IMG/VR virus record: IMGVR_UViG_3300032287_004484
Coordinates: 186,001 to 250,000 of that record
Direction: 5' to 3' (one strand)
Length of the DNA: 64,000 bases
Made by a program: the position numbers and the translations under genes. The first letter of the stretch is position 1. Each line of letters starts with the position of its first letter. The notes under the pieces are model-generated. The model did no database searches. It saw nothing but the letters and a program-made list of their open reading frames with translations, and had not been told where the DNA came from. Below are positions 4,504 through 48,098 of the stretch, one piece after another.

Positions 4504-5631
4504 TTGAAATCACTCGAAAAATTAAAAAAAGTTTTAAGTGATGTTGAAATCAATGAGGAACAAAAGTCCGCTTTAGATGAATTTTTTGCTGAGCTCTACG
4601 AAAACTTACAAGAAAAAGCTCGTGAAGAGGTTCAAGAAGAACTTGAATTTATGAATGAAGCTTTAGATGGTACAGGATCCAAAGAAGGTTGGATCAAAGT
4701 AGAAGAAGCAGAAGAAGCGTTTAATAGAGGAATGTTAGATGCAGAACGAGCTTTTAACGCCCTTAGTCAAGAATATGATGTAGCAATGGAAAAAGCAGAA
4801 AAAGCTTTCAATTTGTTAAGTAATGATTATGATTTGGCTATGGAAAACGCAGAAAAGGCTTTTGACTTAGCAATGGAAGACGCTGAACAAGCATTTAATC
4901 TTTTTGCAGAAGATTCTGAACAAGCTTTCACTTTAGTTCAAGAAGATCTTATCAAAGAACATTCTGAGACTATGGGCAAAGCAATGGATCATTTATATGA
5001 AACATTGTTAGAAAAAGCAAAAGAAGAAATCTATGAATCTCAAGATTTTAGCATGATTAAACAAATAAAAGACATTCTAACACCTATAATTTTAGAAGAA
5101 AGCAACTCAACAGCTTTAATGACTAAAGTTAGAGAATTAGAAAAACAATTATCTTTAGCAAAACAAGAAAAAATTAATAGTGAAAAAGATCAGATTATTG
5201 AATCTTTAGTTGATGAATTGCCAATTAAAGAAGCGAAAATTGTACGTAATTATATTTCTGAAGCAAATTCTATACAAGAAGTTTATGAAAGATATAATCT
5301 CGCAATTTCTTTACTTGAAGCAAAAGAAGATAGAGAAGAATCTAACGAAGATACAATAAACAATAAAAAGTCTTTAAAAGAAGAAAACTCATCTGAATCA
5401 GTTCGTAAACCATCAAGAAATTTTAAAGATTTCTTTGAAGCTAGCGAAGAAGTTGATGAAGAAGATGATTTTGAAGAAATAGACGAATTAGAAGATGAAG
5501 AAATCAATGAAGCGGAATTTGAATTCCAAACAGAAGAAACTGTATTCTCATCTAATTCAAAAGAAAAACCGAAAACAGATAAATTCAATTCTTTTGAAGA
5601 AGCAATTATATCTTCAGTTTTCAAAAAATAA
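4504..5631 (+). CDS. gp22: prohead core scaffold protein (T4 gp22-like)
   Basis: Acidic coiled-coil protein directly upstream of the capsid gene; TTG start with GAGGAGG SD; internal AE.AF repeats. Confidence 0.75.
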   Translation: MKSLEKLKKVLSDVEINEEQKSALDEFFAELYENLQEKAREEVQEELEFMNEALDGTGSKEGWIKVEEAEEAFNRGMLDAERAFNALSQEYDVAMEKAEKAFNLLSNDYDLAMENAEKAFDLAMEDAEQAFNLFAEDSEQAFTLVQEDLIKEHSETMGKAMDHLYETLLEKAKEEIYESQDFSMIKQIKDILTPIILEESNSTALMTKVRELEKQLSLAKQEKINSEKDQIIESLVDELPIKEAKIVRNYISEANSIQEVYERYNLAISLLEAKEDREESNEDTINNKKSLKEENSSESVRKPSRNFKDFFEASEEVDEEDDFEEIDELEDEEINEAEFEFQTEETVFSSNSKEKPKTDKFNSFEEAIISSVFKK

Positions 5632-5650
5632 ATGGAGGAATTTTAATATA

Positions 5651-7249
5651 ATGGAAATTTTTAGTGAATCTTATAAAGCACAAAAAGAAGTAGAAGATAA
5701 ATTATTATCTAAATGGGAACCTGCTCTAGAAGCAGACGGAGGAATAGCAGATGCACACATGGCAAGAACAACCGCTATTCTATTAGAAAACTACATGGGA
5801 CACCTTAAAGCATCTAACCAACTAATAAGTGAATCTGTTACAAGTGGTGACTTTAAAGGGGTTAATCTTGCACTTCTTGGTCTTATCCGAAGAGCAATTC
5901 CCGCACTAGTTGGAGCAGAACTCGTAGGCATCCAAGCAATGCCAACACCTACCTCTCCAATTTTCTACATGAGCTGGAGAAAAGACACTGGTGGAACAGG
6001 AACAACTAAAGGTGGTTCTTCGTACAACGATGAATACTTTGGATATCCTAATGGTGGAGCAGGTCCACTTGGTCAAGCTGATCCATATTACACTTCTCAA
6101 CAACTAAGAAGCGTATTAGTAAAAGAAACACTAGCTACTGGAACAGCTTATGGTATCGTTCTTAATTGGACACCCGTTATTGGATACACAATAAGATTTA
6201 GATTATTAGATGCAAACGGTAGAGTCGTTGGTACATCTTGGATTAACCAAGCAACTCCTACTTCTGGAACAGCTACTGGAGCAAACTCTAGTGGAGTAAC
6301 AGCTTATTCTGGCGGATTAGTAGCAGCTTCTATCACTGTATCTGGAACTTCTGCATCTTACACTAACGCAGCTGGAACTACAGGTACTTCTACAGCTTCT
6401 GTACTATCACCCGTAGTTATCGTTACTACAGCAAGTTCACTAGCTGATGGAGTAAAAATCGTTGTTGATTGGGAATATAACCAAGAATCTAACACTAAAG
6501 CTCCTGATGTTGGTGTTCAAATCGATCAGTTCAACGTGTCTCTCGTAAGAAGAATGTTAAGAGGAAAATTCTCTCTCGATTCTATCACAGATGCACAAGC
6601 ATATCATGGTATTTCTCTCGAAAACGAACTCATGGAAATTATGAAATATGAATTAACCAATGAAATCAACAGAGAAATCATTTCCGACCTTAGATCCATG
6701 GCAGGTATCGCTAACACTTTAGACTACAACTCAAACACTACCTTTAACACTTCTGGAAACTATGATGATTCCTTCAAATTAGTTCTCGATTCCATCAATG
6801 GTCTCGGTGCTGAAATCTTGAATCAGTCTCGTTTAGGAAGAGGTAACTTCGTCGTAGGTAACCCTGTAACTCTAGCATTCTTAGACAGAGTACCTGGTTT
6901 CGTTGGTGCGGGCGTATCTTATGATGGAAAAGGATTAACTTATTCTGGACAAATGGGCAATAGAATTAAATTCTACGCTGATCCACAATACGTTAAAAAT
7001 GAACTACTTGTTGGATATAAAGGACCATCTGCTATCGACACTGGATACATTCATGCTCCATATCTTCCAATTACCGCAACACCTACTCTACTTAACCCAG
7101 AAACTGGTGACCCAAGTAAAATATTTTATACTAGATACGGGAAGACTTACCGTGATTTTGATAAAGACGCTGGTAAATCAACTAACGCTATCTATCGTGG
7201 AGAATATGTATACGGAAGACTCTTTATGCAGAACTTCCCAACAATCTAA
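5651..7249 (+). CDS. gp23: major capsid protein (T4 gp23-like)
   Basis: KWEPALE, TAILLEN, LIRRAIPALVGAELVGIQAMPTPTSPIF, ELTNEINREII, GYIHAPYLP, TRYG; start set at ATG 5651 behind GGAGG rather than 5495. Confidence 0.95.
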   Translation: MEIFSESYKAQKEVEDKLLSKWEPALEADGGIADAHMARTTAILLENYMGHLKASNQLISESVTSGDFKGVNLALLGLIRRAIPALVGAELVGIQAMPTPTSPIFYMSWRKDTGGTGTTKGGSSYNDEYFGYPNGGAGPLGQADPYYTSQQLRSVLVKETLATGTAYGIVLNWTPVIGYTIRFRLLDANGRVVGTSWINQATPTSGTATGANSSGVTAYSGGLVAASITVSGTSASYTNAAGTTGTSTASVLSPVVIVTTASSLADGVKIVVDWEYNQESNTKAPDVGVQIDQFNVSLVRRMLRGKFSLDSITDAQAYHGISLENELMEIMKYELTNEINREIISDLRSMAGIANTLDYNSNTTFNTSGNYDDSFKLVLDSINGLGAEILNQSRLGRGNFVVGNPVTLAFLDRVPGFVGAGVSYDGKGLTYSGQMGNRIKFYADPQYVKNELLVGYKGPSAIDTGYIHAPYLPITATPTLLNPETGDPSKIFYTRYGKTYRDFDKDAGKSTNAIYRGEYVYGRLFMQNFPTI

Positions 7250-7276
7250 TCTAAAAATTATTTTGTTGAAAAATAG

Positions 7277-7307
7277 AAAAAGAAGGCTCAAAAAGCCTTC
7301 TTTTTTT
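7277..7307 (+). terminator. intrinsic terminator after capsid gene
   Basis: agaaggct-caaaa-agccttct followed by T-run. Confidence 0.85.
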
Positions 7308-7341
7308 ATGTTTAGACATCTTTTGAAATAAAAAATAAAAT
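7303..7341 (+). promoter_or_regulatory. sigma70-like promoter for homing endonuclease
   Basis: TTTTATGTT-TAGACA-17 bp-TAAAAT, variant of the repeated motif. Confidence 0.55.
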
Positions 7342-7346
7342 ATATT

Positions 7347-8555
7347 ATGAATAAATACTATGTATATGCTTTATTAGATGAAAGAAAACCAGGATATTAT
7401 GAATATGAAATAGATGACATAATTATTGAATTTAATTATGAACCTTTTTATATTGGCAAAGGAACTGGTAATCGTATTGCTATTCACGAAAAAAGCGCTA
7501 CTTTTGAATCTAACACTACTATTAAAGATAATAAAATAAGAAAGATTTGGCGTGAAGGCAAAAAAGTGGTAAGAACTAAAGTTTTAGATCATCTTGAAGA
7601 TAATCTTGCTTTTGATTTGGAAATAAAACTAATTAAAATAATAGGTCGAAGAGAATTAGGAGGACCATTAATTAATCTTACAGATGGTGGAGATGGACTT
7701 AAGAATCCTTCTCTAGAAGTAAGAGCAAAAATAAGCGAAGGTTCAAAAAATCGTATAATTTCAGAAGAAACAAGAGAAAAGTTAAGGAATAGTTGGTATA
7801 ATAAACTTTCAAGATTAGAAAAAATTAAATTTTCTAGAGGTATAACTTTAGAAGAAGCACAAGTTATTAATCATGAAATATCTATGAAAGTTGGATCTTA
7901 TAGAAAAGGCACTAAACATTCAGAAGAAACTAAAAGGGCTATGTCACTTCGTCAAAAAGGAGTTCCTAAACCTCCTCGAACTGATGAGCATAAGAAAAAC
8001 TTATCTGCTTCTATGATTGGTAAGTTTGCTGGTGAATTTAATCCAATGTATCAAAAGAATTTTAGGGATAATCGTGTTAATAAATTTGGTGAAATTAAAG
8101 AACAAGAATTAGAGAATGAAAGGATAGATAAGATTAATAAGACGACTAATCAGAAAAAGTTAGATGCTGAGGCTCTTTTTCCAGGTACTCCTTATAATGT
8201 TTATATGCAAGCTTATAATTTATATAATAAAGGTACTTCTTTAGAAGAGTCATTGCGAATCGCAACAGAAAATAATGAAAAGAATAATTGTATTGCTAAA
8301 GAAAATAAGATTAAAAAAGATGTGACTAATTTTTATTCTAAATTAAAGAATGGTACTTTAAATCCTTATAAAAAAGAATTATACGATATATCACTTTTTT
8401 TATTAGGATTAAGAAAGCAAAAAGGGATTAGAGATCCATTAGACGAAGTTAAAGATTTAAATGTTTCTTTAGGTAAAAAATTTCGTAAAGATAAAATTTC
8501 TGAATTACAGCAAATTATTAATTTTTATGGAGTATCTATTGAAGAAAGTTGTTGA
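7347..8555 (+). CDS. free-standing GIY-YIG (Seg-like) homing endonuclease with NUMOD3 DNA-binding repeats
   Basis: YYVYALLD...PFYIGKGTGNRI, LEIKLI, LINLTDGGDG; NUMOD3-like SEETREKLR, HSEETKRAMS, TDEHKKNLS. Confidence 0.85.
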   Translation: MNKYYVYALLDERKPGYYEYEIDDIIIEFNYEPFYIGKGTGNRIAIHEKSATFESNTTIKDNKIRKIWREGKKVVRTKVLDHLEDNLAFDLEIKLIKIIGRRELGGPLINLTDGGDGLKNPSLEVRAKISEGSKNRIISEETREKLRNSWYNKLSRLEKIKFSRGITLEEAQVINHEISMKVGSYRKGTKHSEETKRAMSLRQKGVPKPPRTDEHKKNLSASMIGKFAGEFNPMYQKNFRDNRVNKFGEIKEQELENERIDKINKTTNQKKLDAEALFPGTPYNVYMQAYNLYNKGTSLEESLRIATENNEKNNCIAKENKIKKDVTNFYSKLKNGTLNPYKKELYDISLFLLGLRKQKGIRDPLDEVKDLNVSLGKKFRKDKISELQQIINFYGVSIEESC

Positions 8556-9519
8556 GTTTTTAAATAACAGAGGAATTAAACATCGAATTTCTCGAGGTTG
8601 TTATATTACTATTGATAATAAATTTATTTTAACTTTTGATGGAAAAGATTTAAATTCTAATTTAGAAGTAGTTAAGATTGATTTATCTAATGATAGATGG
8701 ATGAGTGTCATTAGTAGATTATGTAAACTCCATATTTCTAAAGATATGATTTCACTTTATCATCAAGTTAAAAAAGAGCCATTTTATTATTATGATCAAT
8801 CTACTTTAATGGATTCTTGGCATAGTATTAATCGAGGTATTCATAATCGTAGTTTTAAGATAATTAAACATTTTCATAAATCTTTAATGGATAGTAGAAA
8901 AAACAAATGTTCTTCACCTAATGAATTTCTTCAAGATAAAAAAAATCTATTCTTTTTAATTAAAAATCGTTTTATTTATTCTAAGACTCTAAATAAAGAA
9001 GTTATTTTAAATTCTTTATCTATTAGTCGTCGATGTCCTATCGTTTCTATTTTTTCACCTCTTTTAGTCAAAGATATTATTAATAAATATGCTCCAGATG
9101 TAAAAACTGTAATTGATCCATTTTCAGGATTTAGTGGTAGAATGTTAGGTTCATTAGCTTTAAATAAAACCTATTTTGGAGGAGATATTAGAGGAGATGT
9201 TATTAATGAAAGTAAAAATATTTTATCTTTTATTAATAAAGATTGTCACTTAGAAGTTTCTGATTTTAAAGATTTTTCTGTTAAAAGTGGTGATTTATTA
9301 TTGACTTGTCCACCTTATAGTGTAACAGAACTATGGAAAGGAGTTACAAGTTATTTTGATGAAGATTATTATATAGATTGGATTTTAAATAATTATAGGT
9401 GTAATAAATATATTTTTATTGTTAAGAATACAAGATATAAAGACAATATAGTAGATACTATTAAAAATGGTTCTTGGACTAAAAGTAATGATCACGAGAA
9501 AATTTTAATTTTTAACTAA
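8527..9519 (+). CDS. amino (N4-C/N6-A) DNA methyltransferase
   Basis: SAM-binding VIDPFSGFSGR and catalytic TCPPY; overlaps endonuclease gene by 29 nt. Confidence 0.7.
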   Translation: MEYLLKKVVEFLNNRGIKHRISRGCYITIDNKFILTFDGKDLNSNLEVVKIDLSNDRWMSVISRLCKLHISKDMISLYHQVKKEPFYYYDQSTLMDSWHSINRGIHNRSFKIIKHFHKSLMDSRKNKCSSPNEFLQDKKNLFFLIKNRFIYSKTLNKEVILNSLSISRRCPIVSIFSPLLVKDIINKYAPDVKTVIDPFSGFSGRMLGSLALNKTYFGGDIRGDVINESKNILSFINKDCHLEVSDFKDFSVKSGDLLLTCPPYSVTELWKGVTSYFDEDYYIDWILNNYRCNKYIFIVKNTRYKDNIVDTIKNGSWTKSNDHEKILIFN

Positions 9520-9560
9520 ATTGCTTCTAAAATAATAAAATATATTTTAGGAGTGTAAAA

Positions 9561-10460
9561 GTGATTAAATACATATTGATTCTACTTTTATTGTTTTGTA
9601 AGAACGATCAAAAAGAACAAAGATTAAAGGCACAAAAGATTTTTGGTAATATTAAAGTTGAGAATCCAGTTGACCAAAAGAGTATTGATTTAGGTAAGAA
9701 ATTATTTTTTGAAAAAGCTTTATCTATTAATAATACTTTTAGTTGTAATAGTTGTCATGTTATTGATAATTATGGTGTTAGTAATGGAAATGTTAATGTA
9801 GAAATTAGTTCTATTCTTATTAAAAGGAATATACCAACAGTTTATAATTCTAGTTTACAAAATAAACAGGGATGGGATGGTAGATTTAATTCTGTTAAAG
9901 ACATATCTATTAATTCAATATTTGATAAAAATAAATTAGGTATACCAAATCAAAAACATCTAGTTAGTAAATTAAAAAAATTAAGATATGATAATGATTT
10001 TAAAGAAGTTGATTTACCTTTAAATTCTGATAGTGTTGGATTAGTTTTATCTCGTTATATTGATACTTTAGTTGTTAGAACTCGATATGATCAGTGGGTA
10101 GATGGTGAGATCGATTTTAATGATGATGAAATTAGTGGATTTAAATTATTTTATTCTTCTAATTGTCAAAGCTGTCATAGTTCATCTACTTTTGGTGGTA
10201 AGAATCTTGCTAAGGTTGGCATTTTAAAACACTTTGATGTAAAAGATGAAGGTAGATATTATATAACAATGAATGAATCTGATCGTCAAGTTTTTAAAGT
10301 TCCAATGTTAAGAGGAATCACAAAAACTCATCCTTATTTCAGTGATGGATCTGTTAATACATTAGAGGAAGTCATTAAAATAATGGGTGAATATCAGCTA
10401 GGTAAGAATTTTAACGAAAAGCAGATTGATCAGATAAAAACTTTTTTATTGACTTTATAA
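9561..10460 (+). CDS. di-heme cytochrome c peroxidase/MauG family protein, predicted lipoprotein
   Basis: Two CxxCH motifs (CNSCH, CQSCH), LGKKLFFE, RNIPTVYN, WDGR, FKVPMLR, PYFSDGS; N-terminal hydrophobic stretch ending LLLFC. Confidence 0.88.
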   Translation: MIKYILILLLLFCKNDQKEQRLKAQKIFGNIKVENPVDQKSIDLGKKLFFEKALSINNTFSCNSCHVIDNYGVSNGNVNVEISSILIKRNIPTVYNSSLQNKQGWDGRFNSVKDISINSIFDKNKLGIPNQKHLVSKLKKLRYDNDFKEVDLPLNSDSVGLVLSRYIDTLVVRTRYDQWVDGEIDFNDDEISGFKLFYSSNCQSCHSSSTFGGKNLAKVGILKHFDVKDEGRYYITMNESDRQVFKVPMLRGITKTHPYFSDGSVNTLEEVIKIMGEYQLGKNFNEKQIDQIKTFLLTL

Positions 10461-10501
10461 TTTTAAGATAAAAAGTTATAAAATAGTTAAGAGGCAGATG
10501 G

Positions 10502-10813
10502 ATGGTAAAAATTAATACAAGTTATTCTAATCTTTTTAAGTTACAAGAAAAGAAGTTGAGTACTGATGAAGCTGTTAAGATTTATGAAGATATTTTTAGT
10601 TCTATGGAAAAAAACAATAGAATTGATATTAACAATAATAACTGTGATCAATTTGATGGAGAAGATTTTTTTTATATTTCTTTAAATGAATTAAAGGAAG
10701 TTTTAAAAATATCAGTTGCTGTTCAAAATATAGATGAAGAGATTGCTGAATACATTATTGGTCATGGAGAATTTTTATCTCATTTAAGTGATTTAGATAG
10801 AAAATTAATTTAA
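10502..10813 (+). CDS. hypothetical protein
   Basis: 103-aa ORF with GAGG SD. Confidence 0.6.
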   Translation: MVKINTSYSNLFKLQEKKLSTDEAVKIYEDIFSSMEKNNRIDINNNNCDQFDGEDFFYISLNELKEVLKISVAVQNIDEEIAEYIIGHGEFLSHLSDLDRKLI

Positions 10814-10859
10814 TTTTAAAATAAACATTCATACAATTTTACTTATACAATAAAGTTGT

Positions 10860-12068
10860 ATGAAAAACATAGAATCAATCAATCGAATTTTTTTATTACC
10901 AAAATTTAAACTTCAAAGGTCTGATAGTTGGTATGAGTTATCAATTATTGATTTAGATTTAGGAAAAGAAGTTTATAATTTTGATTGGAAGAGGCCATTA
11001 TCAGCACTTTTTAATGTTTTTGAAAAAAGATTAGATGAAAAAATAAACGCTATATTAGATTATAAAAATTATGAGGAAGAAGATTTAACAGAAATGGAAA
11101 ATGAAAATAATAGTATTGTTGTTAAAAAAGGTGATATTTTTATTAGCGATATAAATAATGAAACGCTTAATGAAGATTTTTTAAAGAAAGATCCACCTAA
11201 ATTTTATAGAGGTTTTTATTTTCCAGAGTTTACTCCTAATTTTATAAATCGTGTTCGTGCTAAAAGAAATATATTTTTAGCAGGTGAATCAGGTACTGGT
11301 AAAAGTGAAATGGTTCAAAAATTAGCTGATTTTTATGGGCAAACTTTAATTAGAATTAATTTTCATCAAGGAGTCACTGAAAGTTCTTTAATTGGTAAAT
11401 ATATCGTTAAGAATAATGAAACTCAGTTTGCTTATGGATTAGTTCCACTTGCGATGAAAAAAGGTTATTGGTTATTATTAGATGAGATTGATTACGCTGA
11501 ACCAGAACATACGAGTGTTTTACAAGCTGTTTTAGAAGGTAAAGAATTAATAATTACTTCTAATGAAGGTGAAATGGTTTCTCCTCATCAATTTTTTAGA
11601 ATTTTTGCTACAGGTAATACTACTGGGCGAGGTGATTCTTCTGATTCATATCATGGCACTAATTTTATGAATTCTGCTTTTTTAGATAGATGGACTATTT
11701 TTCAAATGGAATATTCTAAAAGAGAAAATAAGATTCTTAACAGTATTATTAATGATTTAGAATTATCTAAAAAGATAGTTAGAATTTTTGAGTTATTTAG
11801 ATCACTTAAGAAAAATGGTGATATTACTAATTCTGTTTTTAGTACGAGAAGAATGATGAATATTGCGGAAGCACTTAAGATGGGTGATTCTATTGGTGAA
11901 GCTTTTAAGTATGAATTATATAGTCGATTTAATGAAGATGAAGCGATGATTTTAACAGAGTGTATTCGGGATATTTTAGATCACGAATGGTATTTCGTTA
12001 AAGATTGGAAGTTAGGTGATCCTCATCACTCTCCACAAGAAACACTTCAAGAGGTTAGTGTTAATTAG
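10860..12068 (+). CDS. MoxR/CobS-like AAA+ ATPase
   Basis: Walker A GESGTGKS, Walker B LLLDEIDY, sensor ATGNT, AFLDRW, STRR. Confidence 0.88.
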   Translation: MKNIESINRIFLLPKFKLQRSDSWYELSIIDLDLGKEVYNFDWKRPLSALFNVFEKRLDEKINAILDYKNYEEEDLTEMENENNSIVVKKGDIFISDINNETLNEDFLKKDPPKFYRGFYFPEFTPNFINRVRAKRNIFLAGESGTGKSEMVQKLADFYGQTLIRINFHQGVTESSLIGKYIVKNNETQFAYGLVPLAMKKGYWLLLDEIDYAEPEHTSVLQAVLEGKELIITSNEGEMVSPHQFFRIFATGNTTGRGDSSDSYHGTNFMNSAFLDRWTIFQMEYSKRENKILNSIINDLELSKKIVRIFELFRSLKKNGDITNSVFSTRRMMNIAEALKMGDSIGEAFKYELYSRFNEDEAMILTECIRDILDHEWYFVKDWKLGDPHHSPQETLQEVSVN

Positions 12069-12076
12069 TGTTATAT

Positions 12077-12114
12077 TTTTAGGTTTATACATCTATTTTT
12101 AGTTAGTATATACT
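12077..12114 (+). promoter_or_regulatory. conserved phage promoter
   Basis: TTTTAGGTT-TATACA-17 bp-TATACT. Confidence 0.7.
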
Positions 12115-12144
12115 ATTTATAGTAAATTTAACGGAGAATATAGT

Positions 12145-12555
12145 TTGGATAATTTTAATATAGAAGTAAATAAGGTTTACAAAATTAATGACCAAGAGTT
12201 CTTATCTAAAGAGGAAGCAGTTAAAAATATAGCAATAAATCATCTGAAAGAAATTGTTGATTTAGGTGTAAATGAAGCAATTAAAAAATCAGAAGATTTT
12301 ATTAAAAATTTAAAACAGATTGTTACAATTAAAAGACATGGACATACTGGTAAAAATTTAAAAGCTCTTAATTTACTTCTCTATAAAGAGGAAGGACATA
12401 TAATATTTAGGGATAATATAGATTATTTTAAATATTACATTTCTAATGATTCTAATTTAACTTACCAAATTAGGTTTAAAGGTACAGTTAGTAAGATGAT
12501 TTCTATTTATGAAGAGGATGGTTTACAAGGTTTATTAAAATTTGAAATTAAATAA
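12145..12555 (+). CDS. hypothetical protein
   Basis: TTG start with GGAG SD downstream of promoter. Confidence 0.6.
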   Translation: MDNFNIEVNKVYKINDQEFLSKEEAVKNIAINHLKEIVDLGVNEAIKKSEDFIKNLKQIVTIKRHGHTGKNLKALNLLLYKEEGHIIFRDNIDYFKYYISNDSNLTYQIRFKGTVSKMISIYEEDGLQGLLKFEIK

Positions 12556-39640: not shown

Positions 39641-41536
39641 TTAATTATAATAAATCCTCGACTCTTTATTTTTCTTAATTACTTTTATAAGTCCATCTGG
39701 AACAAAATTCTTAATTCCTGATTCATGTGATATAATAAAAATACTCATTTTTTCTTTTACAAAAGAACTTCTAAAAATCTCTATAAACTTTTCAATTGAA
39801 TCTTCATCCATAGAACTAAAAATTTCATCTAAAAATAAAATATTTGTTCCACCAATATTAATTCTTAATATAGAAAATAAACTTAAAGATATAGATAAAT
39901 TAACTTGAGCTTTTTCACCCATAGATAATTGAGAGTAATCAAATTCTTCACCTTCGTAAATTATCGTTTCGTTCCAAGAGTTATCAAAAATAATTTCTAT
40001 CTTACCTTCAAAAATTATATCCACAATACTTTTCAGTATAGCATTAAATATAGGAACTATCTTAGACATGATATAACTTTTTAGTGAACCTTCATTTCTA
40101 AAATCAAGTGCTGAATCCCAGAATTCACCAATCATAATAAGATGATTAATTTTTTCTAACTTAGATTCGTTATCTTCTATTATTTTTTTATGATCTCTAA
40201 TATTCTTGATGTTATCCCATATATCAGATATTATAATTTTTTTAGATTTTAATTCTTTTATTTTATCATTTAATTTATTAGCACCTTCTAAATGAAGGTG
40301 TGGATCTTTATTGTTCATGATATCATTAATTATAATTTCTTTAAAAGGTTTATCAATAGTTGAAAAAGAATTTTTATCAAAAGATAATAATTTTTGGTCC
40401 AAAACTTCTTTTTCTTGATCCTTTTTATTTTTTATAAAAATATTACTTTTAACGTTTTTTCTTATTAAAACTAAATTTTCACGACTCTTATTTAATGAAT
40501 AATTAAAAGAATCTAAAACATCTTTTCTGATTTTAATTTCTATATTTTTATCACAGTGAGAACACTTTTCAGTTTTAATTTTACACGACTCATTAATTTT
40601 TTCAAGTATAGAAAAAATATCTTTTTTATTTCTTTTATACTGATCTAAATTATTATTTAATTCCATTTTATTTTTTTTATTAGAGGACTCGTGTTCTGAA
40701 ATAAACTTATTGAGTTTAACATATTCAATAAAATTATTGATAATTTCAATGTTACTATTTTTGAGCAGTAATTCTAATTCAGATTCTGTTTTAGAAATCT
40801 CTAATTGATTATTTTTTATACTGTTTCTTTTATTTATAATTAAATTTTTAATTATCCCATTTAAGGATTTAATAGTAGTATTATGAGCATATTTTTCTTT
40901 TTCTAAAAAATCTCTTTCTTTACGATTAGCTGATAATTTTTCTTTAACAATCTTTCCATAATCTCTTAATTTATCTAATCGTACAATATTTTCTAAAAAT
41001 ACTGATCTTTGATTCCAAGGCAATTCTATAAAATTAGAATTGGTTTCTTTAGTTAGTGTAACACTATGAAGAAGAGTTTCGTGATTAAGAGATATTAAGT
41101 TATTAATTTTTTCTTGTGTTAATTTAATATCAGCAAAAGATTCATCAATCCAAACACCATTATCTAATCTAAAAAGGTCTAATCCATTTCCTTTAGAACT
41201 TAATTTACGATATCTTTCAATTTTCCATTCATCGTTACCTAATTTAAAATTGACTTTAACTAAAAGATTTTTCTTATTCTTTTTATTGATTAATCCATCT
41301 GCTTTAATTTTCTTATCTGGATTTTCGCCAAATATAACCCAATTAAGAGCTTTAATAATAGAACTTTTACCACAACCATTCATTTTTTTAATGTCATCGC
41401 TAAAAACATTCATTTGAAAATCATGGTTTTCACCTCTAATTAAAAAAAGTCCACTTTCTGGAAATTTAAAAATTTGATTATCAGTAAAAGAAAAGAAGTT
41501 TTGTATTTCGAGTGTTTTAAATTCTATCTTATTCAT
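39641..41536 (-). CDS. gp46: recombination endonuclease ATPase subunit (T4 gp46/SbcC/Rad50-like)
   Basis: Walker A NGCGKSS, zinc hook CSHC, signature LSMGE, Walker B LFLDE, H-loop ISH. Confidence 0.92.
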   Translation of the reverse strand: MNKIEFKTLEIQNFFSFTDNQIFKFPESGLFLIRGENHDFQMNVFSDDIKKMNGCGKSSIIKALNWVIFGENPDKKIKADGLINKKNKKNLLVKVNFKLGNDEWKIERYRKLSSKGNGLDLFRLDNGVWIDESFADIKLTQEKINNLISLNHETLLHSVTLTKETNSNFIELPWNQRSVFLENIVRLDKLRDYGKIVKEKLSANRKERDFLEKEKYAHNTTIKSLNGIIKNLIINKRNSIKNNQLEISKTESELELLLKNSNIEIINNFIEYVKLNKFISEHESSNKKNKMELNNNLDQYKRNKKDIFSILEKINESCKIKTEKCSHCDKNIEIKIRKDVLDSFNYSLNKSRENLVLIRKNVKSNIFIKNKKDQEKEVLDQKLLSFDKNSFSTIDKPFKEIIINDIMNNKDPHLHLEGANKLNDKIKELKSKKIIISDIWDNIKNIRDHKKIIEDNESKLEKINHLIMIGEFWDSALDFRNEGSLKSYIMSKIVPIFNAILKSIVDIIFEGKIEIIFDNSWNETIIYEGEEFDYSQLSMGEKAQVNLSISLSLFSILRINIGGTNILFLDEIFSSMDEDSIEKFIEIFRSSFVKEKMSIFIISHESGIKNFVPDGLIKVIKKNKESRIYYN

Positions 41537-41604
41537 TTCTATATTATTATATTAAAACATTTAATATATGTTTATAAATATACTATAGAGGGAGAAAATA
41601 AAAT

Positions 41605-41760
41605 ATGTGGAGATTATGGTGTAAAGCATTAGGTGAAAAAGCAATTCCTAACGATAAAGAAGCTGATAAAGTTGCTTTTATCAGAACGATTTTAATTCTT
41701 CAAGCAATAATCACTAATTTTTTTATAATTTTAAATTTTTTTCTAACACATTTTAAGTGA
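41605..41760 (+). CDS. small conserved phage membrane protein (51 aa, absent from ORF track)
   Basis: MWRLWCKALGEKAIPNDKEADKVAFIRT..., a family I recall from T4-like aquatic phages; GAGGGAG SD; TATAAATA at 41573-41580. Confidence 0.7.
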   Translation: MWRLWCKALGEKAIPNDKEADKVAFIRTILILQAIITNFFIILNFFLTHFK

Positions 41761-42424
41761 CATTTAAAAAGTATTTTTTAAATCCATTACATATTTTACT
41801 AACGTGTTTTTTATTATTTATCCAATTTCTTTTTAAATTTAATTCTTTATGACTATCAAAAGTATCAGATATTGAACATATAAAATCATCACGTTGTATT
41901 TGTTTTATAGATCCATCCTTTACTTCACAAGTATAAATAGGATAATAATCTTCTTCTGAATGTATCTCTTGACTTAGTAATTGTAAAGTGAAGTTTAAAA
42001 ATGAAAATTCAAATGCTATTAATTTTAAATCTTCTTCAACCTCTTCAATTTTTGGCCATTTTCCAATGTTATAATTATTACAAAAAATCTTTCCATCCCA
42101 ATTACACCATCCATGTAATCCACCAACCCAAGACGAAGAAATTCTATCATTATGTAGATAACTTAATTCTAATCGTTGTATTTTATCTTCTATAATATCA
42201 TAGTCTATAGGTATATGTGATATCCTATCTTCTATTGGAAATGAAGAAACATATATTTTATGTAATTCATCATACAAGAGACTATTTTTTGATATATCAT
42301 ATTCTAATAAATACCAACGCTGTGTCCTTATTAAAATTTCAGATGCTTGTTCTTCTGAAATGCTTTCTCCAGTAACTAATAGTCCTGGCCATTTTGGCCA
42401 TCCTTCATTTTTTTGTTGAATCAT
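41753..42424 (-). CDS. hypothetical protein
   Basis: 223-aa ORF; WPKWPGLLVTG, SSWVGGLHGWCNWDG, NIGKWP. Confidence 0.65.
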   Translation of the reverse strand: MIQQKNEGWPKWPGLLVTGESISEEQASEILIRTQRWYLLEYDISKNSLLYDELHKIYVSSFPIEDRISHIPIDYDIIEDKIQRLELSYLHNDRISSSWVGGLHGWCNWDGKIFCNNYNIGKWPKIEEVEEDLKLIAFEFSFLNFTLQLLSQEIHSEEDYYPIYTCEVKDGSIKQIQRDDFICSISDTFDSHKELNLKRNWINNKKHVSKICNGFKKYFLNVT

Positions 42425-42668
42425 ATTTTTTTTCTTTTATTTTTTGAGAAATTTTTTTAAGAAATTTAAACCATCTAAAAAAAAGATAACCAATAAGAAA
42501 AAATGGATAAAATAGTATAAAAAGCGGTATTTCATCTTCATGATATATTATGTTATATTTATTATCGTTTATATTTTCATAAATATAAATTAAAGATGCA
42601 AATAAAAAACCAATAATTAGATATATGCCTAATCCTAATAAAAAACTTATTAAACTTTCTGAATTCAT
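42405..42668 (-). CDS. small two-TM membrane protein
   Basis: Start reset to MNSES (GGGAG SD, TAATG overlap); IYLIIG...LFYP. Confidence 0.6.
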   Translation of the reverse strand: MNSESLISFLLGLGIYLIIGFLFASLIYIYENINDNKYNIIYHEDEIPLFILFYPFFLIGYLFFRWFKFLKKISQKIKEKKYDSTKK

Positions 42669-43120
42669 TAAAAAATTCTCCCTATTAATTTGATAAAGAT
42701 TATTCCTGAACTTGTTCCAATACCAGCACCTAAACAATAAGAAATTCTTTCTCCCCAAGATGCTATTGTAATTCTTCTAATATTAAAAGTCCAAACTAAA
42801 GATAATAAAAAGCCACATACTCCAGCTTGAATCACCATTTCTTTAGAAATAAGAATTGTATTTACAGAAACAAAAAATATTTGTAATAATGATGATAAAA
42901 AAATACTAACTAAATGTTGTTTGTTTTTAATAAATCTAAATAATGCTATTAAAAAAAATAAAGGGTAAAGAAAAACAATAATAAAAAAAAACATTACTTC
43001 AACAAATTTAAATTCATTTACTAAAGAATCATATTGTTGATTTTCTTTAGGTTTAAATATTAACCAAATGAAATAAAATATTGCTCCTAGTGTAATGTAA
43101 TAAATAAGGTATTCTTTCAT
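42668..43120 (-). CDS. multi-pass membrane protein
   Basis: Several hydrophobic segments; YITLG...FLYP. Confidence 0.6.
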   Translation of the reverse strand: MKEYLIYYITLGAIFYFIWLIFKPKENQQYDSLVNEFKFVEVMFFFIIVFLYPLFFLIALFRFIKNKQHLVSIFLSSLLQIFFVSVNTILISKEMVIQAGVCGFLLSLVWTFNIRRITIASWGERISYCLGAGIGTSSGIIFIKLIGRIF

Positions 43121-44130
43121 AATTCTAAATATCCTAATAGTTCTTTTTTATCAATTTCAAAATTATTATCATTAACATATGATTTTAATATATCTTCTGG
43201 ATTAGAAGAAACTATTGTTTCCCAATCTTTTGCAACAGCTATTTTTTGATTACTTTTTGAAAGATCCCATTCAAAAAATACATCAAAATTATTTTTTAAT
43301 AATTTCTCTCTATATTGTATTAATAATGAACTGTCTAGATTTTTTCTTATTATCAATTTTATAAAACTATTACTTAGTGAATTAATATATGTCATGTTAG
43401 AGTTTTTTAGTTCGACTGATATAAATTTAGGTGAATTAAGATTAGGTACAAATTCAATCTCATCTTTATCAGTATTATAAAAAGTCCATCCATGATCTCC
43501 TTCGTCGCCAAAATGAGATTCATAAGGTGATGAAACATAAGTCATAGATCCTTTATTTTGAAAACTATGATAGTGTCCACTAAATACTTTATAAAAATCG
43601 TTCCCAAGACAATTAATATCTAACTCAGAATAAACATCTTCATGGCCATTATCTAAATTAAAGCCTTTTAAACCTAAATGAGTACAAAGAATATTCTTTT
43701 TATCTTTATCATAATTTACTTCCTTTAATTTATTAATAATTACTTCATCATTAAAGTAGGGTAAAAAATGAAATCTAAAATCACTAGAATCAAAAAACCC
43801 GTAATCGTCAAAAAAATTACAGGAACTACTAAATATCGAAAGTCCATTAATCTTTGCATCTCCTTTGGAAAGTATATCATGATTACCTGGAATCATATAA
43901 GTTGGAAACTTATTCATGATTTTTCTTAAAGAAAGAAGCGCTTCGTGTTGTGCCTCTATAGCAACGATATCTTTTAAATGAAATACATCACCTAAAATAA
44001 AAACATAATCAACTTTTCTTTCTATACAAATATCATAAAAATCATCTATAGATTTTATAATATGTTTTAAAAAATTATTATTTTTTTTGTAAATCTTAAT
44101 ATGAAGATCACTAATAAATCCAATTACCAT
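43117..44130 (-). CDS. gp47: recombination endonuclease nuclease subunit (T4 gp47/SbcD/Mre11-like)
   Basis: Metallophosphoesterase motifs SDLH, GDVFH, GNHD, SGHYH. Confidence 0.92.
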   Translation of the reverse strand: MVIGFISDLHIKIYKKNNNFLKHIIKSIDDFYDICIERKVDYVFILGDVFHLKDIVAIEAQHEALLSLRKIMNKFPTYMIPGNHDILSKGDAKINGLSIFSSSCNFFDDYGFFDSSDFRFHFLPYFNDEVIINKLKEVNYDKDKKNILCTHLGLKGFNLDNGHEDVYSELDINCLGNDFYKVFSGHYHSFQNKGSMTYVSSPYESHFGDEGDHGWTFYNTDKDEIEFVPNLNSPKFISVELKNSNMTYINSLSNSFIKLIIRKNLDSSLLIQYREKLLKNNFDVFFEWDLSKSNQKIAVAKDWETIVSSNPEDILKSYVNDNNFEIDKKELLGYLEL

Positions 44131-44188
44131 ATATAAATTATATAATATGAATTTATTAATGTTTAAAAATTAATTAATTTCAGTGTTA

Positions 44189-45307
44189 TTACTTATTTAT
44201 TTTATTTATATAAACTTCATTTTTACCACTGCTCTTAATAAATGGAGCAACATATCTTAGGATTATTCTTTGTACTGACTCAAATTTATTTATTTTATCA
44301 TCATATTTAGGATACATTTTAGAAAGGTCTAATTGATTTTTTCTAGAAAATCCTGGTAAATTTTGCTGATCAGAATACTTATAAAAGAAATCTTTTGAAT
44401 TTTCATAAGCATCTTCGATTAATTCATCAATCATCCCTGGAAAATCAACATCTTTATTATCTGGAAAATTCTTCTTTGGAAATAATTTTAAAAAAGTATC
44501 GTATCCTTTAAAAGTATCTCTAAATTGTTTCCAAGTTATATCAGGATCTTTTTTTGTCCAATCATCTTTTTTTAATCCATAAATAGATTTTTTTATATTA
44601 TTTAAAATAACAGTTATATTTTTTTTATCACTATAACTTTTTGGTGTAGAAATAAAATTAGTTTGTATTGCTTGTAATTCTTTAAACATTTCAATTGGAT
44701 CATATCCATAAGAATAATCAAAATCACCAAAAGTATCTTCATTGTCAAATTTATTAACTGAATTAATTTCAGACATAGCATGAAAAATATAATCGTGAAA
44801 TAAACTATTAAATAAACCTTCTACGTTTTTATATGAATTTTGATATGTACTATATTTTTCAATAGTAAATTTTTCACTAATTTCAAAAGATAATTTTTCA
44901 AAACTCATTTTTTTTAAAATATCATTATCTTTAATAAAAGCAACAATTTTATTTTTTATTTCATCCCTAAATGAATAATTTGGTTTTTTTAAAATATCAT
45001 CTAAATTTATATTTAAATCTGATTTTAAAAAATGTTCAAATATAATTTGTAATTTTTGATATATTTTATACATTTCTTCATCTTTAGAAAAAACAAAAGC
45101 TTGCAATTGTAGATCATATATATTTTGATCAGAAATATTATTTTTTTTAAAAAACTCTTTAGCAATAGAAGTTACATATTTAATTATACAAAAAAGATCA
45201 ATATAATCAAATAAATTTTGTTTAATATCTAATTGTAAATCAAAATCATATAATTCTTTTATTTTTTCATCTATTACTGCTTCAAAATAATTTATTAGTT
45301 TCATCAT
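44189..45307 (-). CDS. hypothetical protein
   Basis: 372-aa ORF; N-terminus MKLINYFE-A. Confidence 0.65.
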   Translation of the reverse strand: MMKLINYFEAVIDEKIKELYDFDLQLDIKQNLFDYIDLFCIIKYVTSIAKEFFKKNNISDQNIYDLQLQAFVFSKDEEMYKIYQKLQIIFEHFLKSDLNINLDDILKKPNYSFRDEIKNKIVAFIKDNDILKKMSFEKLSFEISEKFTIEKYSTYQNSYKNVEGLFNSLFHDYIFHAMSEINSVNKFDNEDTFGDFDYSYGYDPIEMFKELQAIQTNFISTPKSYSDKKNITVILNNIKKSIYGLKKDDWTKKDPDITWKQFRDTFKGYDTFLKLFPKKNFPDNKDVDFPGMIDELIEDAYENSKDFFYKYSDQQNLPGFSRKNQLDLSKMYPKYDDKINKFESVQRIILRYVAPFIKSSGKNEVYINKINK

Positions 45308-45453
45308 TATATCCTAATAATATTTTTATGATCTTTTTTTATTACTATTTAAAAAAATCATAAACATTGTATAAACATCTTGTATAAAATTACACTGAAG
45401 GTGAAGAAGAAAATTAGTACTGATTAGTTATATAAACCAAAAAATAAATTGAT

Positions 45454-45855
45454 ATGGAAAAAAAAGAAAAACAAAAAAAATTAAATATCTTAATCTTAAG
45501 TTTTTATAAAATTTTAAAACTTTCTTCTGATGATCAATTATTTTTACCATTAGAAGATGTTAAAGAAATTAATGATGAAATGCGTGATAATTTAATGATG
45601 AAATTTTTAAATAATTATAACATAAATAAAAATTATTTATCAGATGATTTTTTTAAATATTTTATGAATAAAAATTTATTAGATAATATTGATGATATGA
45701 ATTATTTAGATTTTAATATTAAGGATAAAAGAATAGAAAAACTTTATAATAATTTTATACAGGATTTTAGTTTTTTTAAATATAAAAATAATGTTAAAGT
45801 ATCAAATGATAAAAAGTTTTTAGCAGAATTAGAAAGAATAAGAAATTTACCTTAG
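45454..45855 (+). CDS. hypothetical protein
   Basis: 133-aa ORF. Confidence 0.55.
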   Translation: MEKKEKQKKLNILILSFYKILKLSSDDQLFLPLEDVKEINDEMRDNLMMKFLNNYNINKNYLSDDFFKYFMNKNLLDNIDDMNYLDFNIKDKRIEKLYNNFIQDFSFFKYKNNVKVSNDKKFLAELERIRNLP

Positions 45856-45857
45856 AA

Positions 45858-45886
45858 TAGACACTTTTTTATTTTTCTAATACAAT
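45858..45886 (+). promoter_or_regulatory. promoter (no upstream box)
   Basis: TAGACA-17 bp-TACAAT, 5 nt before the GTG start. Confidence 0.55.
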
Positions 45887-45891
45887 AAAAA

Positions 45892-47267: not shown

Positions 47268-47318
47268 TTACCTATATTCTTTATTTTTATTAATAAATAA
47301 AAATCATATTTACAAAAA

Positions 47319-47888: not shown

Positions 47889-48016
47889 AATTAATCCCTT
47901 ATGTTAATATAATATTTTTACGGGTTTATTATAAAAAATACTTAAAAATAAACATCTTATTATAGAATAATATTAATTGAAAAAATTAATCAAGCTAAAA
48001 ATTAAATATTAGTACA

Positions 48017-48098
48017 GGATCTATGGTGAAATTGGTAGACACAAGAGACTTAAAATCTCTCGCATAAAAGCGTGCAAGTTCGATTCTTGCTAGATCCA
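48017..48098 (+). tRNA. trnL: tRNA-Leu (UAA)
   Basis: Acceptor GGATCTA/TAGATCC, anticodon arm AGAGA-CTTAAAA-TCTCT, long variable arm, GTTCGATTC T-loop; no encoded CCA. Confidence 0.93.

What the first reader, a model, noticed from the sequence alone, without database searches (positions are those of the whole stretch)
9561..10460. Phage di-heme cytochrome c peroxidase that appears to have lost its peroxidatic residues
SEEN: both CxxCH motifs, WDGR and the C-terminal M..YQLG ligand region are intact, and there is a lipoprotein-like N-terminus (LLLLFC-K). By manual alignment to the bacterial CCP consensus as I recall it (WDGRAxxLxEQAxGPxxxPxEM), this copy reads WDGRFNSVKDISINSIFDKNKL. The catalytic Gln and Glu positions are Ile and Lys, the flexible-loop His after heme 1 is absent, and PYFHDG is PYFSDG. 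KNOWN: those Gln/Glu residues are required for H2O2 reduction in bacterial CCPs. INFERENCE: an unusual phage gene repurposed as a non-catalytic periplasmic redox protein, heme sink, dominant-negative or superinfection-exclusion factor, or else a decaying capture. It implies a diderm host with cytochrome c maturation.
Basis: partly seen in the sequence, partly recalled or inferred. Interest (0 to 1): 0.7.

Follow-up and report, generated by a model that had tools for sequence, protein, structure and literature searches.

The report
Phage di-haem cytochrome, peroxidase pocket rebuilt
A 290-kb freshwater T4-like phage carries an intact, selectively maintained copy of a bacterial di-haem cytochrome c peroxidase that keeps both haems and the electron-entry half. 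Every residue that normally reduces hydrogen peroxide has been replaced, so it is probably a repurposed periplasmic redox protein, neither a working classical peroxidase nor a dead gene.

Summary
Window 9561-10460 (+) has a GTG start behind an AGGAG ribosome-binding site and encodes a 299-aa CCP_MauG protein (Pfam E 2e-32). The best solved relative is the Nitrosomonas europaea peroxidase (E 1.6e-47). Both CxxCH motifs, the bridging Trp105, the Ca2+ triad (N90/T256/P258) and the His206/Met275 haem are intact. All five conserved cavity residues of the peroxidatic haem are replaced (Phe>Gly104, Gln>Ile115, Pro>Ser119, Glu>Lys125, Met>Leu126). The distal-His loop holds no His, and PYFHDG reads PYFSDG.

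It is not decaying. dN/dS is 0.08, like the neighbouring core genes, and lake populations show 26 synonymous against 12 non-synonymous variants. The gene's GC equals the genome's, and the gene sits at the same place in a sister phage group that is 52% identical. That sister group keeps Gln and Pro but has Tyr for Glu. Constraint is lowered only on the distal side of the old active-site haem.

The closest bacterial relative is a singleton from a Bacteriovoracales-like contig. It already lacks Glu, the distal His and the Phe.

Best reading: an exported, probably lipid-anchored di-haem cytochrome repurposed away from classical H2O2 reduction. Its exact role is unknown. It is a new variant of a known kind, of moderate interest.

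The parts
9535..9546 (+). Conserved upstream motif ATAAAATATATT, a possible phage promoter element
   Evidence: Nearly identical in the window and in sister-group loci L001 and L002, directly before the ribosome-binding site. It is not enriched genome-wide (38 found against about 29 expected), so promoter function is only an inference.
9549..9553 (+). Ribosome-binding site AGGAG, 7 nt before the start codon
   Evidence: Read directly. The same GGAG is present in L001 and L002.
9561..10460 (+). CDS of the 299-aa di-haem CCP-family cytochrome (P0001), stop included
   Evidence: The AF2 model has mean pLDDT 94.1. Foldseek TM is 0.87 to the active-form N. gonorrhoeae BCCP 7ZS8.
9561..9650 (+). N-terminal 30 residues: short hydrophobic signal sequence, Cys13 (9597-9599, putative lipidation site, box LLFC) and a conserved polar tether
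   Evidence: This is the best-conserved segment between the two phage groups (77-80% against 47-49% overall). Cys13 is invariant in 19 phage sequences. A Leptospiraceae CCP has a similar box, LQFC.
9744..9758 (+). CxxCH motif 1 (C62, C65, H66): attachment and proximal His of the former peroxidatic (P) haem
   Evidence: Invariant in all 19 phage sequences.
9759..9824 (+). Loop that carries the distal His ligand in classical enzymes; no His here (Ile82 at that position)
   Evidence: It is the least conserved region between the phage groups (30% against 52% in canonical pairs).
9870..9938 (+). Rebuilt distal pocket, residues 104-126: Gly104, Trp105 (kept), Ile115, Asn118, Ser119, Lys125, Leu126
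   Evidence: Cavity residue list from PMC10094543. These residues are fixed within the window's group.
10164..10178 (+). CxxCH motif 2 (C202, C205, H206): electron-transferring (E) haem
10326..10349 (+). THPYFSDG, residues 256-263: Ca2+ ligands Thr256 and Pro258 kept; conserved His replaced by Ser261
   Evidence: Ca2+ ligands as described in PMC10094543. A synonymous variant at codon 261 occurs in lake populations.
10383..10385 (+). Met275, sixth ligand of the E haem
   Evidence: Conserved in 248 of 252 homologues and in all phage copies.

Best explanation
The gene encodes a functional, exported di-haem c-type cytochrome with the bacterial cytochrome c peroxidase fold. It is probably tethered to a membrane by a lipidated Cys13. 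An ancestor of a freshwater T4-like jumbo-phage lineage captured it long ago from a bacterium.

The host Sec and lipoprotein machinery and the host cytochrome c maturation system would deliver it to the periplasm and attach both haems. The electron-entry half still has the sequence features needed to accept and pass electrons: the His206/Met275 haem, the bridging Trp105 and the Ca2+ site.

The former peroxidatic haem has lost its acid-base Glu, its Gln, Pro, Phe and Met, and the regulatory distal His. It is therefore either a permanently open five-coordinate haem in a mostly apolar pocket, or it is ligated by Lys125. Classical fast H2O2 reduction is very unlikely.

The selected function is most likely a different haem-dependent redox role in the infected cell's periplasm. 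That could be electron relay or sink, or slow or altered-substrate chemistry at the rebuilt haem.

Shown: gene integrity, family and fold, which residues are kept and which lost, purifying selection, synteny, and region-specific loss of constraint. Inferred: export, lipidation, haem loading, loss of peroxidase activity, and any physiological role.
For: - **Family and fold.** Pfam CCP_MauG E 2e-32. N. europaea CCP E 1.6e-47. The AF2 model has pLDDT 94 and TM 0.87 to active-form BCCP.
- **Kept features.** Both CxxCH motifs, W105, N90/T256/P258 and H206/M275 are invariant in 19 distinct phage sequences from two groups.
- **Lost features.** All five cavity residues and the distal His are gone. Single-residue variants of Gln and Glu are reported inactive in bCCPs (PMC10094543). 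E277Q BthA is inactive, and the Gln/Pro/Glu trio is described as conserved across bCCP, MauG and BthA (PMC6405878).
- **Selection.** dN/dS is 0.08 against 0.02-0.22 for five neighbouring genes. The split is 19 synonymous to 7 non-synonymous (P = 4e-9), and 26 to 12 in lake populations (P = 6e-11).
- **Old acquisition.** Gene GC is 25.7% and GC3 13%, equal to the genome.
- **Conserved position.** The gene lies between the major capsid gene and a CobS-like ATPase in both phage groups.
- **Region-specific relaxation.** Between the two phage groups, residues 61-100 are 30% identical and residues 101-130 are 43% identical. Among 9,956 canonical pairs of equal overall divergence the means are 52% and 63%, and 0% and 2% of those pairs are as low. 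All other regions are at or above canonical values.
- **Dependence on the host.** The phage genome has no cytochrome c assembly gene and no cupredoxin.
Against: - No biochemical data exist. Haem loading, spin state and activity are all inferred from sequence.
- The sister phage group keeps Gln115 and Pro119 and has His118 and Tyr125. That pocket could still be catalytic, so a peroxidase-type function may persist in the lineage and, in altered form, here.
- The pocket residues are fixed within each group, which fits a specific new chemistry as well as it fits a non-catalytic role.
- The lipobox has Phe at position -1, which is atypical, so lipidation is uncertain.
- The host is unknown. No transcript data were found.
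- Conservation of Trp105 and the Ca2+ site might be purely structural.
Confidence: 0.5

Rival explanations
1. It is still a hydrogen-peroxide (or organic-peroxide) reductase that protects the infected cell's periplasm. It would use substitute residues (Lys125 here; His118/Tyr125 plus Gln115 in the sister group) as acid-base catalysts, and it would be permanently active because no distal His blocks the haem.
For: Five other IMG/VR viral contigs carry CCPs with fully canonical pockets, so peroxide removal seems useful to phages. The electron-delivery half is intact. The model resembles the open, active conformation. The pocket residues are invariant within each group. The samples come from lake water. 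From my own knowledge, sunlit surface water contains H2O2.
Against: The Glu and Gln single-residue variants of bCCPs and the Glu variant of BthA are inactive. In the window's copy no carboxylate, amide or imidazole remains at the cavity positions. The distal side evolves faster than in canonical enzymes.
Confidence: 0.2
2. The redox chemistry is irrelevant. The protein is a membrane-anchored periplasmic binding protein that uses the haem-stabilised fold as a scaffold. Examples would be superinfection exclusion or receptor masking, sequestration of a host partner such as the host peroxidase's electron donor, or a haem or iron sink.
For: The lipoprotein-like N-terminus and the following tether are the most conserved part between the two phage groups (77-80% against about 49% overall). 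From my own knowledge, phage lipoproteins that block receptors are known (for example T5 Llp). Constraint on the catalytic side is relaxed.
Against: A 33-kDa protein that needs two haems is a costly scaffold. Trp105, the Ca2+ triad and the Met ligand, which serve haem-to-haem electron transfer, are all invariant. No partner has been identified, and no experiment or prediction supports binding.
Confidence: 0.15
3. It is a recently captured host gene decaying toward a pseudogene.
For: Catalytic residues are lost. The stem branch of the phage clade is long (about 1.0-1.1 substitutions per site).
Against: The frame is intact in 19 distinct sequences. dN/dS is 0.08 and 0.23 in the two groups. Base composition is fully ameliorated. 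Synteny holds across phages that are 52% identical. A ribosome-binding site and an upstream motif are conserved.
Confidence: 0.03

Closest known systems
Classical bacterial di-haem cytochrome c peroxidases (N. europaea 1IQC; P. aeruginosa, S. oneidensis and others)
   Same: Best sequence matches (E 1.6e-47 to 1e-27). Same two-domain fold. Two CxxCH motifs, a His/Met E haem, the bridging Trp and the Ca2+ site.
   Different: The cavity residues Phe, Gln, Pro, Glu and Met are all replaced. There is no distal His. The PYFHDG His is Ser. The protein is about 20-40 residues shorter than most relatives and is phage-encoded.
N. gonorrhoeae BCCP (7ZS8, 6FU3)
   Same: Best structural match (TM 0.87). 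[quoted passage not shown] That is a precedent for the predicted tethering here.
   Different: NgBCCP has the complete catalytic pocket, a distal His75, and an Ala-rich linker. The phage tether is short, polar and charged.
MauG, including its P107S variant (PDB 3SJL)
   Same: Same superfamily and the same Gln/Pro/Glu distal trio in the wild type. From my own memory of Feng et al. 2012 (PMID 22299652; the paper is not held here, and the PDB title appears), Pro-to-Ser lets the residue at the Glu position ligate the haem and abolishes reactivity. The window's protein has Ser at that Pro position and Lys at that Glu position.
   Different: MauG has a Tyr ligand on its six-coordinate haem and lies in a mau operon. 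The phage protein keeps Met275 and scores 88 bits against a TIGR03791 cut-off of 444.
BthA, MbnH and other non-peroxidase members of the CCP_MauG superfamily
   Same: They show that this fold has been repurposed repeatedly (PMC6405878).
   Different: BthA keeps the Glu/Gln/Pro pocket. The MbnH model TIGR04039 scores 111 bits against a cut-off of 363.
P0121, a singleton lipoprotein CCP homologue on a bacterial contig whose MutS is 60-65% identical to Halobacteriovoraceae/Bacteriovoracaceae MutS
   Same: Sister to the phage clade (SH-aLRT 96). It has a lipobox and an alignable N-terminal tether. It lacks Glu, the distal His and the cavity Phe (Ser, as in the sister phage group).
   Different: It keeps Gln and the PYxHDG His and has His at the Pro position. 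It is 40% identical and of unknown function. A long-branch artefact in its placement is not excluded.

Membership tests
CCP_MauG superfamily (Pfam PF03150) | Profile match above the gathering score | tested here: met
   113.3 bits against a cut-off of 25.6, residues 40-183. The search of the phage's own genome gave 102 bits.
CCP_MauG superfamily (Pfam PF03150) | Two c-type haem attachment motifs CxxCH in two domains | tested here: met
   Residues 62-66 and 202-206. Invariant in 252 homologues.
Classical bacterial cytochrome c peroxidase (bCCP) | His/Met-ligated electron-transferring haem | tested here: met
   H206 and M275 align with the ligands. This is by alignment only; ligation was not measured.
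Classical bacterial cytochrome c peroxidase (bCCP) | Bridging Trp between the haem propionates, and a Ca2+ site (Asn side chain, Thr and Pro carbonyls) | tested here: met
   W105, N90, T256 and P258 align to Trp98, Asn83, Thr261 and Pro263 of NgBCCP.
Classical bacterial cytochrome c peroxidase (bCCP) | Peroxidatic pocket: Gln and Glu (essential), with Pro, Phe and Met | tested here: not met
   I115, K125, S119, G104 and L126. Essentiality is taken from PMC10094543 and PMC6405878.
Classical bacterial cytochrome c peroxidase (bCCP) | Loop His that ligates the P haem in the resting state (activatable class; also present in N. europaea as His59) | tested here: not met
   Ile82 is at that position, and there is no His in residues 67-132.
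Classical bacterial cytochrome c peroxidase (bCCP) | H2O2 reduction with a periplasmic electron donor | not testable with these tools
   Needs a matured protein and an enzyme assay.
Classical bacterial cytochrome c peroxidase (bCCP) | Homodimer | tested here: inconclusive
   The complex-prediction job with two copies returned no answer.
MauG (TIGR03791) | Equivalog score; Tyr ligand on the six-coordinate haem; mau operon context | tested here: not met
   87.8 bits against 443.85. Met275 is kept. The neighbours are phage genes.
MbnH family (TIGR04039) | Family score above the cut-off | tested here: not met
   110.9 bits against 362.85.
Bacterial lipoprotein (signal peptidase II substrate) | Short signal peptide ending in a lipobox with an invariant Cys | tested here: inconclusive
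   The N-terminus has one Lys, a 9-residue hydrophobic run and then Cys13, which is invariant in 19 sequences. Phe at position -1 departs from the usual Gly/Ala/Ser (my own knowledge). A Leptospiraceae CCP shows LQFC, and P0121 shows a standard LLAC. No lipoprotein predictor was available.
Phage auxiliary (host-derived) gene | Lies inside a complete phage genome between phage genes and has cellular homologues | tested here: met
   The record is a 290,274-bp virus genome with direct terminal repeats. The Gp23 capsid gene lies upstream, and a CobS-like ATPase and a helicase lie downstream. Thousands of cellular homologues exist.

The most novel reading that the evidence does not exclude
In this phage lineage the former peroxidatic haem has been converted into a different kind of haem site. 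Lys125 (Tyr125 in the sister group) sits at the old catalytic-Glu position, and it would either ligate the iron or line an open apolar pocket. This would turn a peroxidase into a lipid-anchored di-haem electron relay or small-ligand binder, which the phage uses to tap or divert the host's periplasmic electron flow during infection. That would be a virus-encoded respiratory-chain accessory cytochrome.
Probability: 0.15. Interest if true: 0.8.

Novelty: new variant of a known kind. Interest (0 to 1): 0.5.

Why it matters
Phage-encoded c-type cytochromes seem to be rare. None of 38,880 PHROG families matched this protein. The 50,697 GenBank phage records gave only four matches: two annotated Salmonella chromosome records and two short, unannotated phage-labelled records. 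Full-text searches found no paper that treats cytochrome c peroxidase as a phage auxiliary gene.

This case is a natural experiment on the bCCP fold. The electron-entry half is kept under strong selection while the catalytic pocket is rebuilt in two different ways in two sister phage groups. Characterising it could show what a di-haem peroxidase scaffold can do without its Gln/Glu pair. It could also show a way for phages to interfere with periplasmic redox chemistry, and it would constrain the unknown host to a diderm that matures cytochromes c.

The value is limited for now. The function is unknown, and uncharacterised bacterial relatives with replaced pockets also exist.

Tried and rejected
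- **Nucleotide search against phages.** blastn of window 5000-12500 against GenBank phages gave no match.
- **Protein search against phages.** tblastn of the protein gave only four chromosomal-type Salmonella/E. coli matches at 29%.
- **Viral contig scans.** A single-protein scan of IMG/VR found nothing. An alignment-based scan found five canonical CCPs at 33-38% identity.
- **Family libraries.** PHROGs gave no family. NCBIfam gave only sub-threshold MbnH, MauG and SoxA matches, also for eight other non-canonical relatives.
- **Homodimer prediction.** The tool returned 'no answer', so it counts neither for nor against dimerisation.
- **RNA runs.** None was listed, so there is no expression evidence.
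- **Host inference.** The capsid protein is only 23-31% identical to any isolated phage. 'Relatives' are not available for a virus record. The genome holds only two tRNAs. MutS of the P0121 contig is 36-39% identical to the Leptospiraceae and other genomes tested, but 60-65% identical to named Halobacteriovoraceae/Bacteriovoracaceae proteins. That dates the donor lineage loosely and does not identify the host.
- **Promoter scan.** Sigma-70 matches were barely above the shuffled background in this AT-rich DNA. The conserved upstream motif is not enriched genome-wide.
- **Papers not held.** The MauG P107S and Q103 papers (PMC3365509, PMC3985960) could not be read. What I say about P107S comes from memory.
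- **Between-group dN/dS.** The values of 0.5-0.6 are not interpretable, because synonymous sites are saturated and the composition is extreme.
- **Model geometry.** No model coordinates were exposed, so the distance from Lys125 to the haem site could not be measured.
Full report
**1. What is at the coordinates**

Window 9561-10460 (+) is a single open frame of 299 codons. It starts with GTG, 7 nt behind an AGGAG at 9549-9553. In the sister phage group the same codon is ATG and the N-terminus is the same, so the start is sound.

The protein matches Pfam CCP_MauG (E 2.1e-32, 113 bits against a cut-off of 25.6) and Cytochrom_C.
- CxxCH at residues 62-66 and 202-206
- WDGR at 105-108
- PYFSDG at 258-263
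- MGEYQLG at 275-281
- an N-terminal hydrophobic run ending in Cys13

**2. Setting**

The window is bases 186,001-250,000 of a 290,274-bp IMG/VR virus record with direct terminal repeats. GC is 25.6%.

The neighbourhood of the gene, in order:
- a T4-type major capsid gene (Pfam Gp23, E 1e-53), about 2.3 kb upstream
- a GIY-YIG homing endonuclease
- a 330-aa ORF with methyltransferase-like motifs
- the CCP gene
- a 103-aa ORF
- a CobS-like AAA_5 ATPase (phrog_249)
- a helicase

The capsid protein is only 23-31% identical to that of any isolated phage. Runs that hold the sequence are lake or freshwater metagenomes.

The phage genome has no second c-type cytochrome. The only other CxxCH ORF looks like a cytoplasmic aminotransferase. 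It also has no cytochrome c assembly gene and no cupredoxin. Haem attachment and any electron donor must therefore come from the host. From general knowledge, that implies a host with an extracytoplasmic cytochrome c maturation system.

**3. Family and fold**

The best solved relatives by sequence are classical di-haem peroxidases. N. europaea 1IQC scores E 1.6e-47, followed by the S. oneidensis, N. gonorrhoeae, E. coli YhjA and P. aeruginosa enzymes. MauG is far weaker, at about 1e-7.

An AlphaFold2 model built on a 148-sequence alignment has mean pLDDT 94.1 and pTM 0.88. Its best Foldseek matches are the mixed-valence (active, open-loop) forms of bCCPs, led by N. gonorrhoeae 7ZS8 with TM 0.87.

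NCBIfam models for MbnH, MauG, the His-Xaa-Ser MauG-like protein and SoxA all score far below their cut-offs. By descent, the protein is a classical bCCP.

**4. Residue audit**

The HMMER alignments to 1IQC and 6QKN are ungapped across the N-terminal domain. Counting chain positions reproduces the published numbering, which gives these equivalences (N. gonorrhoeae numbering):

| Classical residue | Phage residue |
|---|---|
| His75 (His59 in N. europaea), distal ligand | Ile82 |
| Asn83 | Asn90 |
| Phe97 | Gly104 |
| Trp98 | Trp105 |
| Gln108 (Gln92 in N. europaea) | Ile115 |
| Pro112 | Ser119 |
| Glu118 (Glu102 in N. europaea) | Lys125 |
| Met119 | Leu126 |
| Thr261 / Pro263 | Thr256 / Pro258 |

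PMC10094543 names Phe97, Gln108, Pro112, Glu118 and Met119 as the conserved P-haem cavity. It assigns O-O cleavage to Glu118 and states that single-residue variants of Gln and Glu are inactive. PMC6405878 reports that E277Q BthA is inactive. [quoted passage not shown]

So the window's protein keeps:
- both haem attachment sites
- the His/Met haem
- the bridging Trp
- the Ca2+ triad

It has lost:
- all five cavity residues
- the distal His
- the His of PYFHDG, whose role I do not assert

Among 252 aligned homologues:
- Gln is kept in 225, Glu in 207 and that His in 237.
- All five cavity residues are kept in 174.
- None is kept in 8. Five of those are this phage group and three are distant uncharacterised proteins.

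**5. The phage clade and its origin**

Searches of 5.8 billion clustered proteins and of 1.84 billion representatives found only two close groups:
- **Group A** is 94-100% identical to the window and has 8 distinct sequences.
- **Group B** is 51-53% identical to the window and has 11 distinct sequences down to 79% identity with each other.

Identity then drops to 41% and below.

Both groups lie on phage contigs at the same position, after gp23 and before the CobS-like ATPase and the helicase. They form one clade with full support on a long stem of about 1.0-1.1 substitutions per site.

Group B keeps Gln115 and Pro119 but has Ser104, His118, Tyr125, Phe126, no distal His and Ser261. Group A has Gly104, Ile115, Asn118, Ser119, Lys125 and Leu126. 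Within each group these residues do not vary.

The sister of the phage clade (SH-aLRT 96, quick tree; a long-branch artefact is not excluded) is P0121. It is a singleton lipoprotein homologue on a 35%-GC bacterial contig. The MutS on that contig is 60-65% identical to proteins named Halobacteriovoraceae or Bacteriovoracaceae.

P0121 already lacks Glu (Ile), the distal His and the cavity Phe (Ser, as in group B). It keeps Gln and the PYxHDG His. By parsimony, part of the loss may predate capture. Ser261 then arose on the phage stem, and Gln and Pro were lost only in group A.

The best named genome hits are Leptospiraceae, Nitrosomonas, Verrucomicrobiota, Acidobacteriota and others at 31-38% identity, all with canonical pockets where I read them. 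No named host subfamily shares the substitutions.

**6. It is under purifying selection**

- Window against two group-A contigs: dN/dS is 0.08 (23-26 differences). Between two group-B contigs it is 0.23.
- Five neighbouring genes give 0.02-0.22 in the same comparison, and the group-B helicase gives 0.10.
- With 173 synonymous and 724 non-synonymous sites, a split of 19 synonymous to 7 non-synonymous has P = 4e-9.
- Contigs from four further lake runs show 38 listed variant sites in the gene, 26 of them synonymous (P = 6e-11). These include synonymous changes in the codons of Asp114, Ser119 and Ser261.
- Gene GC (25.7%) and GC3 (13%) equal those of the genome and its neighbours, so the capture is old.

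The 'decaying capture' option is rejected.

**7. Where constraint was lost**

I compared identity by region between groups A and B with 9,956 pairs of canonical bCCPs of the same overall divergence (45-56% identity).
- Residues 61-100 (distal-His loop) are 30% identical, against a canonical mean of 52%. No canonical pair is as low.
- Residues 101-130 (distal helix) are 43% identical, against 63%. Only 2% of canonical pairs are as low.
- All other regions, including the E-haem domain, are at or above the canonical mean.
- The first 30 residues (signal sequence, Cys13, polar tether) are the best-conserved part of all, at 77-80%.

Selection therefore still acts on the fold, the electron-entry half and the N-terminal anchor. 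The canonical constraint on the distal side of the P haem is gone or has changed.

**8. Export and anchoring (inferred)**

The N-terminus has one Lys, nine hydrophobic residues and then Cys13, followed by a charged stretch. This is the layout of a lipoprotein signal peptide. Phe at position -1 is unusual (my own knowledge). However, a Leptospiraceae CCP has LQFC, P0121 has a standard box, and their tethers align with the phage one. N. gonorrhoeae BCCP is a documented lipid-anchored bCCP. No lipoprotein predictor was available.

**9. Interpretation**

My best reading (confidence about 0.5) is an exported, probably lipid-anchored di-haem cytochrome with these properties:
- It still accepts electrons at the His/Met haem and can pass them through Trp105.
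- Its second haem no longer performs classical peroxide reduction.
- Its selected role is another haem-dependent redox function.

A lead from memory bears on this. In MauG, the Pro107-to-Ser change lets the residue at the Glu position ligate the haem and abolishes reactivity (Feng et al. 2012, PMID 22299652; the paper is not held here, and the PDB 3SJL title is). The window's protein combines Ser at that Pro position with Lys at that Glu position, so a Lys-ligated or otherwise closed haem is conceivable. This is untested.

The rivals are:
- a non-canonical but working peroxidase (0.2). This is favoured by the five IMG/VR viral contigs with canonical CCPs and by group B's polar pocket.
- a non-redox membrane-anchored binding protein, such as an exclusion factor or a haem sink (0.15).
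- decay (0.03).

**10. Novelty**

No PHROG family matched. There is no bona fide CCP in 50,697 GenBank phage records. Full-text searches found no paper that treats CCP as a phage auxiliary gene.

However, canonical CCPs do occur on other viral contigs, and pocket-less uncharacterised bacterial relatives exist. I rate this a new variant of a known kind and of moderate interest.

**11. What did not work**

- The homodimer prediction returned no answer.
- No RNA run was listed.
- The host could not be identified.
- Promoter scans are uninformative in this AT-rich DNA.
- Two MauG papers were not held.

Noticed in passing
window 7347-8555 (+): A GIY-YIG/NUMOD3 homing-endonuclease gene lies between the capsid gene and the methyltransferase-like ORF, and overlaps the latter by 29 nt. 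It is present in group-A contigs but absent from the same interval in the sister-group locus L001, so it looks like a mobile insertion.
   Followed up: partly
window 8527-9519 (+): The 330-aa ORF directly upstream of the CCP gene carries DPFSGFSG and TCPPY motifs, which look like those of an amino-methyltransferase. It has no Pfam hit and only a weak phrog_12517 match.
   Followed up: no
window 5652-7249 (+): The major capsid gene has GC 39% and GC3 49%, against 26% and 13% for the genome and neighbouring genes. Its real start is probably the ATG at 5652, behind GGAGG, not the ATG at 5495 given by the ORF list.
   Followed up: partly
window 10860-12068 (+): A CobS-like AAA_5 ATPase (phrog_249 'porphyrin biosynthesis', E 3e-57) lies 400 bp downstream of a haem protein gene. 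It is 34-37% identical to cyanophage CobS. I did not examine whether the proximity has functional meaning.
   Followed up: no
window 48017-48098 and 49091-49164: These are the only two tRNA genes of the 290-kb genome: tRNA-Leu(TAA) and tRNA-Asn(GTT). Coordinates were converted from genome positions 234017-234098 and 235091-235164.
   Followed up: no
window about 40000-48000: GC skew turns negative here, which suggests a block of genes on the minus strand.
   Followed up: no
L004-L008 (IMG/VR contigs of 27-159 kb, GC 36-42%): Five other viral contigs carry CCP genes with fully canonical pockets, several with lipoprotein signal peptides. Most of the neighbouring genes I tested had no Pfam match, and one has DUF932. 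CCP may be a recurrent, undescribed phage auxiliary gene.
   Followed up: partly
Homologues P0184, P0193, P0201, P0246, P0225, P0181 and others: A recurrent non-canonical bacterial pocket pattern has His at the Pro position and Val at the Glu position, usually without a loop His. This may be a distinct uncharacterised subfamily with a helix-borne distal His.
   Followed up: no
P0009 and P0412 (sister phage group; L001 4131-5030): The otherwise nearly invariant Arg of WDGR is Asp (WDGD) in two sister-group sequences.
   Followed up: no
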